Source: Mantamonas sphyraenae STR306 (Eukaryota > Protista > CRuMs). Taken from it: a stretch of DNA of 64,000 nt. The position numbers were made by a program, and so were the translations under genes. Of the stretch, positions 19,697 through 28,388 are shown in pieces. The stretch covers positions 62,001 through 126,000 of the forward strand of contig JAPMXV010000008.1 in assembly GCA_026936335.1 (NCBI GenBank). Direction: 5' to 3'. Numbering within the stretch: position 1 is the first letter of the stretch; the number at the start of each line of letters is the position of its first letter. Under the pieces are notes generated by a model. It was not told where the DNA came from, searched no databases, and saw only the letters and a list, made by a program, of their open reading frames with translations.

Positions 19697-20988
19697 TCAC
19701 CGTCCGTTCAATGACGACAAGAACCCAGGAGGTGCCACAGGACGCGAATGTGTGTCCACCCCACCACCGCCACCGCCACCGCCACCGCCGCCACGCAGCT
19801 TGGGCTTGGCCAGCTTCGGTTTGCCATCCTCCATCACACGCGTGTCAAACGACCACGCAGGACGTGGACGTCGCTTCCCACGTGGCCCACTCGGCCGCTT
19901 CACCTCCTGCTTGCCCTGCATGACCCCATGGAAAAACTCGTCCACCAGATCCTTTGCATACGGACTGCTTTCGTACGAGAACGACGTAAACTGGGTGGGT
20001 TGCAGCTGCCCGCCACCTCCGCCACCTCGGCTGTTCCCTGCCGTCTGCTCACGCATGTACGATCCAATCTTGCTCGACGCCCTTCGACTGCTCCCGTGTT
20101 CCTTCTTTCCTCCGTCCTTGCTGCTGCTGCTGCTGCTGCTCTCTTTCGGGTACTGCGGCACGTACCCTCGCCACTTGACAAATTGCTTCTCCAGATACGT
20201 CAGCTTGCTCTCCAGATCGTCCACCTCCTCCTCGTACATGTGCAATTGGTTGTCCTTGTACTGCACCGTCTCCAGGATGTCCCCACGTCGCATCTTGTCA
20301 TACTCCCCACGCTCCACCATGCTCAGCAGATCGGAACGCAACGCAGGCACCTTGCCCTTGCGTCGCTCCTTCTGTTTCCGCTTCTGCAACACAAAATCCA
20401 GCTCTTCCTCATCCAACGCCACTCCACGCACACGTTCTTGACCCTGTGGCTGCTGTCCCTCCTTGCTGGGGCTCACAAACGCAATGACCGCTGCCGCCGC
20501 CGCCACCGCCGCCACCCCTCCCTTCCTTCTCCTCCAGCAATTGCAACACTTCGATGTTGTCGTCGTAAAACACCACATCCTGTCCCTTGCCTCCTCGCTT
20601 TGTGGTGCTGCGTGGTGACGAACCGTGTGCGCGGCTGAGTTCTGCCTTGCTCATCCTCGCCTGCTGTTCCACCCTACGCTGCCGTGCCTCCTTTGCCTCT
20701 GCCTCCTTGCGTGCCTTTTGTGCCTTGTCCCTCTTTGCACGCTTGTTCTCCAACACCCCACTCTTGCGCACCTTGCGTCCACGCACCTGCGCTTGGATCT
20801 TGGCTGCTGCCTCGTGTTGCTTTGCCTCTTCTTCCAGCTCCTGTGCCATCAGTCGTTCAAAGTCGTCCATCTCCTCTTCTCGCTTCTCCAGAATGGCCAT
20901 CTCCTCCTCGCTCATTCCAACTCGCTTCTTCCCTCCTCCTGATGGCGTCCCGGGTGTGCTTGCGCGTGACTTGCTGTCTGCAGACGAT

Positions 20989-21028
<40 letters not shown>

Positions 21029-24000
21029 ACGATGCGCTTGTGAGCTTCTCACCTGTACCATCGCTTCCCTGTCCTTCCTTCCCTGTGCCCTTTGCCTCGG
21101 GTTGCCCGTCTGCATCCAAGGCCATGGGTTGCACCTCTCGACGCGTCGCATCCCCGCCACCCGCTGCTGCTGCATTGCTGTTGGGTGTCATGCTGCCGCC
21201 TGGTGAGTTCAAACTGGATCCGATGGTGTCCACACGTCCGCTTTCGATGCTGGATTGGATCGCTCGTTCGCTGTCCTCCAACCTGCGCCTCTCCACGTCC
21301 TCCTCCATCCTTCGCTTGGCCTCCTCCAACACCGTCTTCTTCTTCTTCGCCTTGGCCAACGCCTCCCGGTCCTTCTTGGCACGTGCCTCCTTGGCCTCCG
21401 CCGCAATCCGCTTCTCCTGCTCCAACAGACGCATCTTGCGCTCCAGCTTCTCCAGATTGAAGGCGATGCCGTTCACGTAGGGATGGTTGGCACCCAACAC
21501 ACGCTGTGCAATCTCAATTGCCTCCTGATAGTGTGTGCGTGCCTGCTCGTACTGTTCCATCAGTTCGTGCACAGCACCCATGTTGTGCAACGACGCACTC
21601 ACGTCCTCGTGAAAGTGGCCCCGCACCCGTTCGTACACCTCACGAGCGGACTCGAAGCACGTCAGCGCACCCTCCAGCTTGTTTTGCTCCTGCAACACCA
21701 CACCCAGGCTCGTGTACGTCGATGCCACCTGCACACTGTCCCGTCCCGACGAACGCAGACGCAACTCCAATGCCTCCCGATAGTACGCCTCTGCCTCTTT
21801 GGGTTTGCCCAGCCGTGCGGCAATCTGTGCCAGTGTGGTCACGCTGCCCACCACCGCCGACGCTGCCTCCACAGATGACGCCGTGCCCTTCTTTGCATTG
21901 TGACGCTCAATGGCCAGCGCACGCATCAGATACGAACGTGCATCCTCGTACCGTTCCATCTTCACGTACAACGAGCCCAAATTCGACAAACTCGCTGCAA
22001 GATCCGGATGGTGCTTGTTCAGCTGCGCCTCACGGATTTCCAGCGCACGCTTAAACAGCTCCTCCGCACGCACGTGGTTGCCCTGCTTGAAACTCAAGCC
22101 ACCCAGGTTGGTGAGACTGGCTGCCGTCTCCGAGCTGTCCTCGCCCAGGGCCGTGTTGCGAATGTCCAGCGCCATCTTGGCGAACCGCACGGCGCCGTTG
22201 ATGTCTCCGCTGGCCTTGGCAATCACCGCCAGGTTGTTCAGACTGGCGGCAGTGTCCGGATGATCCAGACCCAACACCTTTTGGCGGATGGCCAGTGCGC
22301 GTTGGGACAGGGGACGTGCCCGGTCATACATGCCTTGGCTCTTGTACAGACCCGAGAGGTTGTTCAGAGAGGTGGCCACCGCAGGGTGGTCCTTGCCCAG
22401 CACCGATTCGCGAATCTGCAACGCGCGCTGGTAAAACTCCTCTGCCAGGCCGTACTTGCGTTGCTTCTTGTACAGGAAGCCCAGGTTGTTGAACGCAGAA
22501 GCGACCTCGCGGTGTTCCTCACCGTAGCAGTCCACCAGCATGTCGATGGCTCGCCGTTGAAGCCGTTCCGCCTCGTTGAAGTTGCCCGTTTGTGCACTGA
22601 GCAACACCAGCGGATTCAGCGACGATGCCACCTTGGGATGTTCCAACCCGTACAGCTTCTCGTTCACCGCCAACGAACGCGAGTACAGATTCACGGCCTG
22701 TTTGAACTTGCGCAAACGCGTACACAGGGTGCCCAGCAGCTCCAGCGTCTGCGCCACCTCCTCGCTCACGGGACCCTTCACCGACTCGAGGATTTCCAAC
22801 GCACGCTGGTGCAAGGCCACACTGTTTTCCCACCTGTCCGGTTGCTTCTGGTACAGTTCGCCAAGGACGTTGAGCACGGTGGCCAACTCCTCGCTCACCG
22901 CCCCATACTGCTCCTCCATGAGCTTGCCGGCCATCTTCAGCGACTCCTGCGCCTCTTCCACTTCGTTCAACTCCATCAACGCCGCACCCCGGATCAGCCA
23001 CAGGTGGCCCAGTTTCTCGCCCTGCTTCAGGGTCGATGCAAACGCACGTGCCATGTCCAACCGTTGCTCGGCACGATAGATGGTGTGCAGACCCGAACTC
23101 AGCATGCTAAACAGGCGATCGATGCTCACCGTGTCCGCAATGGCATCCAGATGCTGCAACGCAGATTCCAGATCGCTCAACAGCAAGGCTTGCTTGCTGC
23201 TGCGTCGGCGATGGTCACTCACACGGTCCGCCTGTTTGATCAGAAGGCCAACCATGCGGAGGTACTTGCGGTGCAGGCTGTTGACCACACGCTCCAGCGC
23301 GCTGTCCCCGAGGTTGCTGCTGAGCATGTCATCCTGGTCCTGTTGCACCTGCTTGCCGCCTTGTACCTTGCTGCTCAGACCCTCAAGGAGCCAGTCGCGA
23401 TTGGCACGCAGCAGGGCGGCGATGTTTTTGTCCATGTGCAGCATGACTTGGTTGTAGTCCCATCCCGGTGTTTCCGAGGCAATGCGCACGAGTGCGGGCA
23501 CGACCAGGTGCGACGTCATGCACAGGTCCAGTGTTTCAGAGTCCAAACGCAGTGCCTTGTGCTGGGCCTCCTGGTCACGCTTGCGCGACAACTCTGTGGG
23601 CGGGTCCGACACGGTGTACAGGCGATTGTTGGTTTCGCGCCACAGCGACAGATACTCCTCCACGCAGGCCTCCATGTCCTCTTCGTCCAGTTGCACCACC
23701 GCCAGCGAGGCCATGGTGAACAGCGACGGAAACACAGAGCAACTGTGCAGCATCTCCTTGGTGGCGGCGGTTTGAAAGTGTGCAGCACGGTGCGTACCAC
23801 GACGGTGAGCGGATTGGGGTGCGAGTCGCTGGCACTGCTGGAAGGTGCCAGCTGAGCGAGTGTGTCCACAACCTCTTCAAAGGTCAACCCCATGGAAGTG
23901 CTGTCCTTGAGGAAGCGACCCAGCAGCGACAGGGCCAACGGGTGGCCTGCACAGATGGCCATGCACTGAGCCATCTGTTTCTCGCGGTTCTTGCGCGCCG

Positions 24001-26082
24001 TGGGCATCTTGGGGATGTGCTTCTTCACGTGTGCACGCAACAGTCGCTCCGCCTCTTCGTCGTCCAGGTAATCGGTGTGCACCGCCGCCGCCAGTGTTCC
24101 CCACCTCTTCTCGTCCCACAGCACCGACTTGCCGTCATCGCTGCGATCCAGCGGCATGCGCGACGTCACCACCACCAAGGCACGCCGGTTGCGCGGCAGC
24201 AGCGGCTCCACACTGGCCATGTCTGGTGCATCGTCCACCACCAACACAGAGTACGCCGAGTTGAAACAGCGCAAATAGTGTTCGCGCAGCTTGCCGTCGT
24301 CCGAGGGCACCGATCCCGTGGGACTGTGTTGCAGGATCACCGACGATATCGCAAGGTGCATGCTCAGCGGTGTCTCGGACGACGATCCAAGGTCCACCTG
24401 CATGCTGCGCGACACAATGTTGTTCTCACGTGCTTGTCGTGCCACCAGCGACGCAAGTGCGCTCTTGCCCGTGCACGCCGGGCCGTGGATGTACACGGTG
24501 ATGAGGTCGGTGGCACGCTGGTGTGCCTTGTTGAACCCTTTGATGATCTGTTCCGTCTGTCTATCCATGCCAAACAGAGGTCCCACGTGCGGCTTTTTCA
24601 ACACCGTCGACGGCATCTTCAGAGGCATCTTGTTGCCCACCTGCATGTCGACGTGGTGCCACTCCAGACGCACCTCGTTGCGTGCCAATTTGCCGCGCCA
24701 CACTGCCTGGATGCGTGTCGCTGCCGTTTCCAGCTTCAGTTGCTCCACGCGCGCCTGCTCCTGCTTTGCTTCCAGCACACCCATCTTGCGCACGCGTGCG
24801 CCCTTGTACGTCGCCTGGATCTTGGTTGCCGCTTCGTGCTGTTTCTTCAGTTCCTTGCGTGCTGCGTGTCCTCGGTATGCGCTCTGGATCGCCGTCGCCT
24901 GTCCGTGCACAAAGTTCATCTCACGACGGATGCGCACGCCACGGTACCACGCTTGCAGTCGGATGATGACACGGATCATGCGCATCTTCTGCAGCTTCTT
25001 GGCTTCTTCGGCCTGCTGCCTGGCCAAGTGTCCCCTGTAGTTTGCTTGAATTGTGGTGGCTGCACGTTCCTTTTTCTGATCCTGATTACGCGACTGGCGT
25101 CCACGCACCTGTGCCTGAATCTTGGTGGCTGCCTGGTGCCTGTGTCCCAGCTCCTTGCGTTCCTGATGGCCGCGGAACCCTGCCTGGATGATGGTGGCTG
25201 CCTGTGCCCGTGCGGACTCCTTTGTGCGCACGTGGTGGCCCCTGTACACGGCCTGGATTTTCAGAGCCGACGCCTCACGCTCCTGCGCCACCCGTTTCTT
25301 CTCCTCCTCCGGGTCGTACTTGATGCGCTTCTCCAGTTTGGCCCGCTTGATGGCCAGTTCCACCTCCTCCTCCTGTGTGCGTTCGTGCGACGCCCTGTAG
25401 CTCGGCGAGTTGGTGTACGGGTTATACTGGTCCGCTTCCGCGTCGTACTCGGGCATCCGTTCGCTCACAAACGACGAGTCCCACGGTTTGCTGTGGTCCA
25501 CTCGCTCCACCCCTTCCCCTTCTTCGCCCGCTCCGGCGGCCCCCGGGCTGTACACGTCGTCCACACCCTTCTTCTTGCGTGCCCGTGGACTGACGCCGTT
25601 CTTGCCGCCGTTGCTGCTGTTGCTCGTGTTGTTCGCCGCCGTCTTGGACGCCGAGCTGGCCGTGCCCATCTTTGACAAATCTCTGCCTGGACTCACTCCC
25701 CTCCTGGCCGGTTTGCTCTTACTGCTGCTGCTGCTGCTTTTGCCTCCCGTCCTTGCAGCGGGGGGCGTGGTGGCAGAAGCTGCGCTGCTTGGGCTGTGGC
25801 TGCTTTTGGTCGTCTTTGCCGTGGTTGCCTTTTTGTCACTCTGCGTACCTGTCTGCTGCTTGGTTGTCTTCTTGCCGTTGCTCTTGTTCTTGGCTTTCTC
25901 TTGAGTTGTTTCGTTGTGTGCTGCTGCCTTTTCCGGCGTTGCCGTTGTTGTCGTGAGTGTGGGTGTGGGTGTGGGTGTGGGTGACGTCTGCTTGGCTTGC
26001 TCCACATCGTCCACCACCACTTGCTCGGTCGTGTTGGCCTTGTTTGTCTCTTCTTTCTGTACATTCTCTGCGGCAGGTGGTG

Positions 26083-26126
<44 letters not shown>

Positions 26127-28388
26127 TTGTTCCCATTCGATGTCTTGCGCGCCGCCAGTGAGCTGCTGGATCCCGTGCGTGCATGTCCTTTGCCTTTTCC
26201 CCTGCCTGTGCCTTGCGTTGACTTTGTGTCTGATGCGCGACCATTCTGCGTCTCTTCCACGGACGACAACGACGACAATTCGTCCTGCTTCTCACCCTCC
26301 TCCTCCGCGTCACCTGCCCCTGCGTGCCTCTTGGCCAAATCAATGCCACTGGACGAGCCCGTAAGTTGGCTCATGGACACCTGCGACAGATTGCTGCTGC
26401 GACGCGCCAAATACCCGCGAAATTGGGCCTGAATGAGGGTGGCCGCCTGCGACTCCTCAGCACGTGCCCTGTGCACGTCTGGCAAGCTGCGTGCGGTGAC
26501 CTGTTCCGAGTGCACACTGGTGAGTGGATCCAGCGAGCCTCCCTCCAAGTCGTTGTCGTTGCCGTCGTCGTCGCCGCCGTCGCCGCCGTTGTTCATTGGC
26601 GGCGGATCGGATTGCAGGGCGTCGTACAGGAGTGCGGCACACTCTTTGTATCCGCCGTTGCGTGCCACATCATATGCCGTGAGTCCCTTGGCGTCCTTGA
26701 GGTGGACATTGAGTTTGAGCCCCAGCAGGATGCGCAGGACGTCGCGTCGACCAGCCTCGGCGGCGGCGTGACCCACTGTGCGTCCCGAGTTGTTGGTCAG
26801 GTTGACCTTGGCGTGGCCGTCCAACACCAGGGTTTCCACCACCTCGACGACATCGGCAGCAAACATGGATCGTGTGCGCACGTCGACCTCGGCATCCCTC
26901 TCTGCCGCCACACTGTAGTGCAACGCCGTGTTGCCTGCAGTGTCGGCCTGGTTCACATCCACCCCTGCACCCACCAACCAGGCTGTGAGTGTGGGATTGG
27001 CATTTTTGGCGGCGACGTGAAGACCCGTGAGTGCTGCGGGACCGGACAGGTGCAGATCGGCGCCGCTCTGGATGAGGTACCCTGCAATGTCTTCGTTGTT
27101 GGACATGATGGCCAGGTGCAAGGCGGTCCAACCCTGGGCGTCGACCACGTTGACGTCCGGATTGAGATTCAACAGTTGTGCCACACACTCGGTGGACCCT
27201 GCCAGGGCACCCAGATGCAAGGCCGTGCGACCCATTGCATTCGTGCGATTCACATCAAAGTCGGCCGATGTCTTTGGGTTGTCCTGTTTGGCCACCACCA
27301 TAATGTTCAACGCCGATTCGGCGTTGAGCAGGGTGGCATACTGCACGGCATTGTTGCCCGTCGACGGGTCGCACTCCTCCTCCACATCGTACCCCAACGA
27401 GATCAGTGTGCTCAATGCAAACAACGCCCCTTGCTCAATGGCCACCTCCACGGGGCTTAGGCCGGCGTTGTTCCGCTGTTTCATCAGACGCTTGTCCAGC
27501 TTGTGCACCAGAAGCACCACATCCTGCTCATCCGTGCCCACCGCGTGGTGCATGATGTTCTCCCCATCCGGTGTCTGTGTCCAGTGTACCCATGCATGCG
27601 ATTGCGTGTCAATACCATGTGTGTGGGTAGGTGGGTGTGGGTGGGTGGACGGGGGTGGGCGGAGCAGGCTCAAACGAGGAGAAACCCAACCCCGCGGGCA
27701 TGCCACTCACCTTGTACGCTACCACCGCCCCGTATCGTTCCAGAAGCTCCACTTCCTTCAGATTGCCTGATCGAACGGCCAACACGAGTGGAGTCATTCC
27801 CTGTGTGGATGCGAGTGTGTGAGAGAGTGTCAGTGTGAGTGTGAGTGGGTGAGGCTTTTGATATTTGGCAGCCCGCCGACCGTTGCCCGATCATCTCTTT
27901 TCGGGGACGCTGCTCGCCGCACAGACGCAACCAGCGCTCGTGAACACCGGAATATCGAGGCAGGTGCGGTATGGGTGGATGATACAGTGGAGGCAATGAC
28001 GCATGGGTGTGCAGGACAGGGCAGGAGAGCCTGGAAAAGCGGGTGCCGAAAGGGAGAACCTACGCTGGTTGTCTTGAGTTCGGTCTTGGCTCCCTTGGCC
28101 AGGAGGAACTTGGTGAGGGGTGGATTGCCCTGGCGAGCAGCGACATGGAGGGCGGTTTCGCCGTTGGGCATCTGTGCGTTGATGGAAGCTCCGTTGGCCA
28201 GCAAATCGGGCACAACGTCGAGCGAGGCGTTCTGGCAGGCCAGGCACAAGGCCGTCCATCCGTCCGACGTGGCTCTGTTGAGCAGCTCCACTTTCGAACG
28301 CTCCTCCATCAGGTCCAGAAACGCCACCAGCTTTGCCTGTTGGTCCGTGACCACGAGTTGGATCATGCGGTCGTGCAAACGAGGACAT
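19697..28388 (-). CDS. Giant ankyrin-IQ-NB-ARC(STAND)-TPR protein (introns ~28063-27801 and ~27710-27575; frameshifts ~28380, ~23775, ~20485)
   Basis: Ankyrin repeats (GWTAL, GETALH, GRTALH, GNTALH); about 10 IQxxxRGxxxR motifs; Walker A GPACTGKS; Walker B VLVVDD; VVTSR; CAGHPLAL; KLC-type TPRs (HPAVATSLNNL). Confidence 0.8.

What the first reader, a model, noticed from the sequence alone, without database searches (positions are those of the whole stretch)
19697..28388. One giant ankyrin-IQ-NB-ARC-TPR protein: a possible calmodulin-gated NLR-like STAND switch
Seen: three long ORFs and two upstream exons join into one ~2,700-aa protein if single-base indels near 23775 and 20485 are corrected (TFK[P]AATKEMLHSC; GSGH|AFVSPSK). 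The domain order is ankyrin repeats, 1 IQ, a disordered linker, 8 tandem IQ motifs just upstream of a P-loop ATPase, a winged-helix region, more than 12 KLC-type TPRs, a coiled coil and one more IQ. Established: NB-ARC+TPR is the tripartite STAND/NLR layout, and IQ motifs bind calmodulin-family EF-hand proteins. Inference: this is a STAND ATPase whose activation is coupled to Ca2+/calmodulin. I do not know this architecture from characterised proteins.
Basis: partly seen in the sequence, partly recalled or inferred. Interest (0 to 1): 0.85.

Follow-up and report, generated by a model that had tools for sequence, protein, structure and literature searches.

The report
Calmodulin-binding NLR-like giant protein
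A deep-branching marine flagellate has one roughly 2,750-residue gene that attaches ankyrin repeats and ten calmodulin-binding motifs to an immune-receptor-type (NB-ARC plus TPR) switch, a combination not found elsewhere in these searches, although whether calcium controls the switch is untested.

Summary
Confirmed as one gene. Both 'frameshifts' look like assembly errors: contigs from three runs lack 2 nt at 23778, and their length over the GGC repeat at 20484-20522 differs by -7, +2 or -31. All restore the frame, but neither is clearly a single-base indel. The model is about 2,750 aa: ankyrins, IQ, disordered linker, 8 IQ, NB-ARC (over the Pfam cut-off; folds like ZAR1/Apaf-1), winged helix, 12-13 KLC-type TPRs, coiled coil, IQ, unknown tail. 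The genome has about 19 NB-ARC matches; other readers of this scan noted its CHAT-NB-ARC-TPR arrays. No examined paralogue or listed database hit combines NB-ARC with IQ arrays. New here: the IQ rod sits in the effector slot; Walker A/B and sensor-1 are kept, but the ADP-latching MHD histidine appears replaced by serine; the TPRs are old and nearly invariant, unlike the near-identical repeats of immune-type paralogues. Best reading: a domesticated STAND scaffold whose calmodulin-stiffened arm is the output. Calcium gating of the ATPase is possible (about 0.2) but untested.

The parts
28064..28366 (-).
27801..28063 (-). Predicted intron 1 (GT..AG, 263 nt, phase 0); not tested with reads
   Evidence: the splice keeps the ankyrin register
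27711..27800 (-). Exon 2, one ankyrin repeat (30 aa)
   Evidence: (Ank E 8.5e-4)
27575..27710 (-). Predicted intron 2 (GT..AG, 136 nt, phase 0); not tested with reads
26620..27574 (-). Ankyrin repeats at the start of exon 3
   Evidence: Ank_2 E 4.7e-32, 4 stretches
26402..26434 (-). IQ motif 1, directly after the ankyrins
25307..26389 (-). About 360-aa S/T/A/K/G-rich low-complexity linker
   Evidence: no Pfam match there
24680..25258 (-). Array of 8 tandem IQ motifs, all IQxxx[RK]GxxxR, mostly at 23-aa spacing
   Evidence: (E 1.9e-42); IQ7-8 fold as one helix
23780..24574 (-). NB-ARC nucleotide-binding domain and HD1: Walker A 24461-24484, Walker B about 24230-24247, sensor-1 Arg at 24160, GxP at 23947
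23778..23779 (.). 2-nt insertion in the assembly, absent from both alleles in three runs
   Evidence: tables 4 and 8
23562..23777 (-). Winged-helix domain; the MHD-equivalent position (about 23604-23609) reads Ser-Asp instead of His-Asp
   Evidence: model confidence there is only pLDDT 53-56
23022..23561 (-). Helical connector (HD2-like), poorly conserved
   Evidence: no Pfam match
21432..23021 (-). 12-13 KLC-type 42-aa TPRs
21252..21449 (-). Charged helix or coiled coil
   Evidence: sequence
20766..20798 (-). IQ motif 10
   Evidence: 16.6 bits, under the cut-off; consensus match
20484..20522 (.). GGC repeat where the assembly is out of frame; run contigs differ by -7, +2 or -31 nt
   Evidence: table 8
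19697..20483 (-). C-terminal tail of about 260 aa with a probable coiled coil; no known family; stop codon 19697-19699

Best explanation
One expressed gene of about 2,750 aa in Mantamonas sphyraenae, built from the genome's own NB-ARC-TPR (NLR-like STAND) stock, with the usual enzymatic effector (CHAT-like protease, Schlafen) replaced by an ankyrin head, a flexible tether and an 8-IQ rod. Shown: single reading frame over 19702-25500, the domains, the NB-ARC fold, and intact Walker A/B and sensor-1. Inferred from known STAND logic: the C-terminal TPRs bind a fixed cellular partner, the NB-ARC exchanges ADP for ATP and oligomerises, and this clusters the N-terminal arms. Inferred from myosin necks: calmodulin or a related EF-hand protein coats the IQ array as light chains and stiffens it into a rod (about 29 nm if about 195 residues form one helix), and Ca2+ changes its stiffness or occupancy. 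Calcium would then tune the output arm of a domesticated, probably non-immune signalling or cytoskeletal scaffold, not act as the primary trigger. With the MHD histidine apparently lost, the switch may rest close to 'on'.
For: Frame restored at both breaks in three runs. Run X2 behaves like the study's RNA run: longest record 20 kb against 169-278 kb, coverage ending at 19702, and four runs listed for the species. One X2 contig spans 20149-23780. An intact 1,405-aa paralogue carries NB-ARC, winged helix and TPR in one frame. A profile of relatives matches the upstream frame to node 226 and the downstream frame from node 253. Paralogues carry effector domains at the position of the IQ array. 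All ten IQs match the consensus with Gly at position 7 (PMC4914028), and the genome has many EF-hand proteins. TPR repeat-to-repeat identity is 0.36 against 0.64-0.95 in the CHAT-type paralogues, and only two allele differences, both synonymous, fall in the TPRs.
Against: No orthologue was found, so conservation cannot be read. The tool does not label X2 as RNA; that is my inference, and contigs cannot show one transcript. The contigs over 23778 have only 25 letters on one side (the tool asks for 31). The introns and the start were not covered. Oligomerisation, nucleotide binding and calmodulin binding are all untested. The Schlafen paralogue C1, which looks immune, also has old TPRs (0.26), so repeat age alone does not exclude defence.
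Confidence: 0.4

Rival explanations
1. Degenerate STAND used as a structural ciliary or centrosomal scaffold, analogous to inversin (ankyrins plus IQ) and NPHP3 (NTPase plus TPR) joined in one chain; no real switching.
For: Three departures from the relatives' consensus: Met where 54 of 62 have the Arg of FxGR, Ala-Cys in Walker A where 40 of 62 have Gly-Gly, and Ser for the MHD His; long branch. Inversin has ankyrins and two calmodulin-binding IQs and forms a complex with NPHP3 in cilia (PMC4263411). The gene lies head to head with a STIL_N gene. The best matches of the IQ array are ASPM-like proteins.
Against: The NTPase is NB-ARC type (34.4 bits), not NPHP3 type (NPHP3_N 14.1 bits over the P-loop only). 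A separate NPHP3_N match of 54.4 bits exists on contig C21. No inversin name or IQ motif among the 120 best ankyrin matches. TPR_NPHP3 also matches the TPR-bearing paralogues. Catalytic Lys, Asp-Asp and Arg are kept. Neighbours in this genome are functionally unrelated.
Confidence: 0.25
2. Calmodulin-gated STAND: calmodulin on the last IQ motifs holds the NB-ARC off in place of the lost MHD latch, and Ca2+ releases it.
For: IQ8 ends about 35 residues before the nucleotide-binding domain. The MHD histidine, which locks ADP in plant NLRs and in AfsR (bioRxiv 10.64898/2026.09.02.748808), seems absent, so another brake could be needed. In myosin-5A Ca2+ releases calmodulin and raises ATPase activity (PMC4914028). 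A tenth IQ beyond the TPRs could clamp both ends.
Against: The linker between IQ8 and the NBD has pLDDT under 50, so the model gives no confident docking (calmodulin was not in the model). N-terminal domains of STANDs are normally outputs (PMC12258605). Eight tandem IQs look like a spacer, not a single gate. The same review doubts that Ca2+ is the cellular activator of myosin-5A. The MHD assignment rests on a low-confidence region.
Confidence: 0.2
3. Immune NLR in which the ankyrin and IQ parts are integrated decoys or adaptors that recruit an enzymatic partner such as one of the CHAT-like proteases.
For: It belongs to a genome with about 19 NB-ARC matches, most with CHAT-like N-termini; its nearest paralogue is Schlafen-NB-ARC-TPR; calmodulin-binding integrated domains (not said to be IQ) are reported in wheat NLRs (PMC7422411).
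Against: No enzymatic effector; single copy among housekeeping genes; TPRs neither homogenised nor polymorphic.
Confidence: 0.1
4. Two or three separate genes, or a decaying pseudogene.
For: The assembly shows three frames; the 5' exons were not covered by reads; no single contig spans the whole stretch.
Against: Both breaks vanish in the run contigs; the first break cuts through a single NB-ARC module; no stop codon among the 23 coding allele differences.
Confidence: 0.05

Closest known systems
NB-ARC-TPR STAND proteins of bacteria (AfsR-like; Anaerolineales TPR protein MCC6190576.1) and fungal NB-ARC-TPR NLRs
   Same: NB-ARC, winged helix, helical connector and TPRs in order; best sequence relatives are 26-39% identical over the NBD.
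   Different: N-terminal ankyrins and IQ array, C-terminal IQ and tail; MHD histidine apparently missing; about 2,750 aa.
Plant NLRs ZAR1/NRC and Apaf-1/CED-4
   Same: Best structural matches of the NBD-HD1 model (Foldseek E 9e-11 for ZAR1; VIA Z 16.5, rmsd 3.3 over 236 residues for NRC2). ORC/Cdc6 AAA+ chains follow closely at Z 15.3.
   Different: TPR instead of LRR or WD40; no CC, TIR or CARD; 13-18% identity.
Myosin-5 neck and ASPM (tandem IQ arrays)
   Same: Tandem canonical IQ motifs, mostly 23 residues apart; ASPM-like proteins are the top matches.
   Different: No motor or CH domain; the array adjoins a STAND ATPase.
Inversin (NPHP2) and NPHP3
   Same: Ankyrins plus IQ at one end, NTPase plus KLC-type TPRs at the other.
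   Different: Analogy only: the NTPase is not NPHP3 type, no specific inversin similarity was found, and a separate NPHP3_N-type gene exists.
M. sphyraenae paralogue G000:C1:201974-206188 (Schlafen AlbA_2, NB-ARC, TPR, C-terminal hydrophobic segment)
   Same: Closest NB-ARC in the genome (29% identity, E 3.7e-16; sister at SH-aLRT 90 in one quick tree).
   Different: Nuclease-type effector, canonical LHD motif, no IQ or ankyrin.

Membership tests
NB-ARC / AP-ATPase STAND | NB-ARC profile above the curated cut-off | tested here: met
   34.4 bits against 23.5
NB-ARC / AP-ATPase STAND | Walker A GxxxxGK[ST], Walker B hhhhDD, sensor-1 hhhTsR, GxP | tested here: met
   Walker A has an unusual Ala-Cys at positions 3-4
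NB-ARC / AP-ATPase STAND | NBD-HD1 fold followed by a winged-helix domain | tested here: met
   (NBD-HD1); secondary structure and for the winged helix (low confidence; the two parts were folded separately)
NB-ARC / AP-ATPase STAND | MHD latch histidine | tested here: not met
   Ser aligns with the His that is nearly invariant in relatives; 56 of 62 relatives have His. The alignment there is weak.
NB-ARC / AP-ATPase STAND | ADP/ATP binding and activation-dependent oligomerisation | not testable with these tools
   needs biochemistry
NLR-like immune receptor | Tripartite effector-NBD-repeat layout | tested here: met
NLR-like immune receptor | Known N-terminal effector (TIR, CC, CHAT, nuclease, HeLo and others) | tested here: not met
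   only ankyrin and IQ match the N-terminal part
NLR-like immune receptor | Rapidly diversifying or homogenised sensor repeats | tested here: not met
   0.36 against 0.64-0.95 in paralogues; two synonymous differences in one diploid strain
IQ calmodulin-binding motif | IQxxxRGxxxR consensus, helical, tandem spacing 20-27 | tested here: met
   ten of ten match the core; five of seven spacings are 23
IQ calmodulin-binding motif | Binding of calmodulin and its Ca2+ dependence | not testable with these tools
   needs pull-down or calorimetry
NPHP3 | NPHP3_N-type NTPase domain | tested here: not met
   14.1 bits against a cut-off of 24.8; better match elsewhere in the genome
Inversin | Ankyrin array specifically similar to inversin | tested here: inconclusive
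   no inversin among the top 120, but that ranking favours long arrays and no inversin sequence was at hand for a direct comparison

The most novel reading that the evidence does not exclude
An NLR-type STAND that has traded the ADP-locking MHD histidine for a calmodulin brake, so that a Ca2+ rise, not ligand binding to the repeats, triggers oligomerisation: a directly calcium-gated NLR-like switch, in a lineage near the root of eukaryotes.
Probability: 0.15. Interest if true: 0.85.

Novelty: new variant of a known kind. Interest (0 to 1): 0.52.

Why it matters
STAND/NLR proteins normally pair a repeat sensor with an enzymatic or pore-forming effector. Here the effector slot holds a calmodulin-binding rod and ankyrins, and the usual off-latch seems gone. 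That is a candidate for an immune-type switch recruited to calcium or cytoskeletal signalling. It also shows that Mantamonas has a sizeable NLR-like repertoire; my paper searches listed no paper on it. In practice, gene models built on this assembly will split the protein in three. The limits are that every part is a known domain, it is so far one gene in one unculturable-to-genetics lineage, and no function is shown.

Tried and rejected
Introns as the cause of the two breaks: GT..AG pairs exist near both, but the run contigs show short indels and no skips, and the candidate at 20485 would create a stop; rejected. Orthologue searches: phmmer of the NB-ARC part over 1.84 billion representatives gave best E 1.7e-12; of the 150 listed, one had a single IQ-like match and none an ankyrin pattern. 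The word-based searches see only 768-2,443 aa proteins and so cannot find a full-length relative. Two IQ-plus-TPR proteins (P0329, P0347) have no P-loop. The C-terminal tail gave nothing in Pfam or the Atlas. Horizontal origin from bacteria: the quick trees disagree, the branch is long, and a single Mantamonas clade is not rejected (p-AU 0.70), so no donor is claimed. Paper searches for NB-ARC or NLR with IQ motif and calmodulin returned none. The bacterial promoter scan was uninformative. The joined protein was not sent to any search or folding tool; pieces were used by reference.

Full report
Source. The window is G000:C8:62001-126000 of a 25,061,354-base, 78-contig assembly. The Mantamonas sphyraenae paper gives 78 contigs of mean length 321,299.41, which multiplies to the same total. 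It describes a diploid FALCON PacBio assembly polished with Illumina reads, mostly single-exon genes, and four runs: PacBio, paired DNA, mate-pair DNA and RNA (PMC10492846). The identification rests on that match.

Observation. The splices 28063-27801 and 27710-27575 are GT..AG, phase 0, and keep the ankyrin register. Ten IQ motifs match IQxxx[RK]GxxxR; eight form an array spaced 23,23,23,31,23,23,36 (Pfam E 1.9e-42).

One gene. Contigs of runs X1-X3 leave out two letters at 23778, in both allele contigs of each run. At the GGC repeat 20484-20522 the tool dropped its gap rows, but aligned lengths differ from the assembly by -7 (X1), +2 (X3) and -31 (X2, over a longer span), each equal to -1 mod 3. 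Both breaks therefore look like assembly errors; they are not clearly single-base ones. X2 is probably the RNA run (longest record 20 kb, coverage ending at 19702 beside the stop codon); this is my inference, since the tool labels it 'DNA?'. One X2 contig covers 20149-23780 without a skip. Caveats: the contigs over 23778 have 25 letters on one side, under the tool's 31; none spans the whole stretch; the 5' exons lay outside the 6,000-letter limit. Independent support: the paralogue on C1 carries NB-ARC, winged helix and TPRs in one 1,405-aa frame, and a profile of 62 relatives matches the upstream frame to node 226 and, weakly (E 0.015), the downstream frame from node 253. Local scripts joined the two NB-ARC pieces with X for alignment and trees and put the ankyrin exons in a row to list repeats.

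The ATPase. It passes the NB-ARC cut-off (34.4 against 23.5 bits). Its model (mean pLDDT 82.5) matches ZAR1, Sr35, NRC and Apaf-1 best. Walker A Lys-Ser, Walker B Asp-Asp, sensor-1 Arg and GxP are present. Three consensus positions differ: Met for the Arg of FxGR (54 of 62 relatives have Arg), Ala-Cys inside Walker A, and Ser at the MHD histidine. The last rests on a region of pLDDT 53-56, though the strand-to-helix position fits. That histidine locks ADP in plant NLRs, and changing the motif makes AfsR autoactive (bioRxiv 10.64898/2026.09.02.748808). The nearest sequences are bacterial or metagenomic NB-ARC-TPR proteins at 26-39% identity, but the trees cannot place the long branch and do not reject one Mantamonas clade.

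Family context. The genome has 19 matches over the NB-ARC cut-off. Most of those examined have a CHAT-like N-terminus (by eye; a Pfam hit in one) and TPRs, some have SH2 or Cbl-N domains, and one has Schlafen AlbA_2. None of the fetched NB-ARC frames shows an IQ or ankyrin pattern. The CHAT-type TPRs are near-identical copies (0.64-0.95), as expected of fast-shuffling receptors; the TPRs here are old (0.36) and differ between alleles at only two synonymous sites. No protein among the 150 listed NB-ARC hits, 120 ankyrin hits or 120 IQ hits joins an IQ array to a STAND domain, and paper searches found no such case.

Mechanism. In NLRs the C-terminal repeats sense and the clustered N-terminal domain acts (PMC12258605). 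The IQ array lies exactly where paralogues keep their effector. Tandem canonical IQs in myosins carry calmodulin as light chains that stiffen a lever, and Ca2+ can loosen them (PMC4914028). The simplest reading (0.4) is a domesticated STAND hub that displays calmodulin-stiffened arms with ankyrin heads, with calcium tuning the arms. A degenerate ciliary or centrosomal scaffold (0.25) is suggested by the motif drift, the inversin/NPHP3 analogy and the head-to-head STIL gene, but the NTPase is not NPHP3 type and a separate NPHP3_N match exists on C21. I noted that analogy before seeing that another reader had (note, look-up); the repeat is not evidence. Direct calmodulin gating (0.2) gains from the missing histidine but has no structural support: the IQ8-NBD linker is unresolved in the model. 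An immune decoy role (0.1) and separate genes (0.05) fit worst.

Verdict. Real, very probably one protein, and an unreported arrangement of known parts: a new variant of the NB-ARC-TPR kind. It passes the NB-ARC sequence and fold tests but fails the MHD test and has no known effector, so it is called NLR-like, not an NLR. Interest 0.52; 0.85 if calcium gating were shown.

Noticed in passing
window:27771-33635 (+): Long frame with STIL_N (E 2.7e-39), head to head with this gene; its likely start lies within a few hundred bases of exon 1.
   Followed up: partly
L026, L027, L029, L031-L038 (contigs C51, C67, C68, C72, C73, C76): Expanded CHAT-like-NB-ARC-TPR family with near-identical TPR units; looks like a fast-evolving immune repertoire.
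   Followed up: partly
L030:3337-5538, L039:3843-6134, L041:3790-6984: STAND proteins followed by SH2 (one with a Cbl-N EF-hand-like domain) and preceded by CHAT-like domains: possible phosphotyrosine-linked STANDs in a CRuMs flagellate.
   Followed up: no
L003:5974-10188 (+): Schlafen AlbA_2-NB-ARC-TPR protein with a C-terminal hydrophobic segment; the closest paralogue.
   Followed up: partly
L025:1959-9119 (-): 2,387-aa frame with two CHAT-like-NB-ARC units in tandem.
   Followed up: no
L030, L037, L040; window:54174-56229: Several genes change frame in mid-course (NB-ARC paralogues; a polyprenyl synthetase in two frames), possibly further assembly indels or introns.
   Followed up: no
window:23785-23861 and 25142-25191: Allele differences cluster in HD1 (6 sites) and around the second and third motif of the IQ array (5 sites, 4 changing a residue); the poly-Gly at 20484-20522 may differ by 9 nt between alleles.
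   Followed up: partly
G000:C21:20184-20657 (-): NPHP3_N match (54.4 bits) in a 2,005-aa frame: candidate NPHP3-like gene; it could not be fetched.
   Followed up: no
P0329, P0347: About 2,400-aa proteins with N-terminal TPRs and long IQ arrays but no P-loop, from other sources (Logan, EukProt).
   Followed up: partly
window:58515-62756 (+): Kinesin motor domain with C-terminal leucine-rich repeats. Other neighbours include Paf1, a cullin, TBC1D23-like, synaptobrevin/longin, SET and DUF4200 genes.
   Followed up: no
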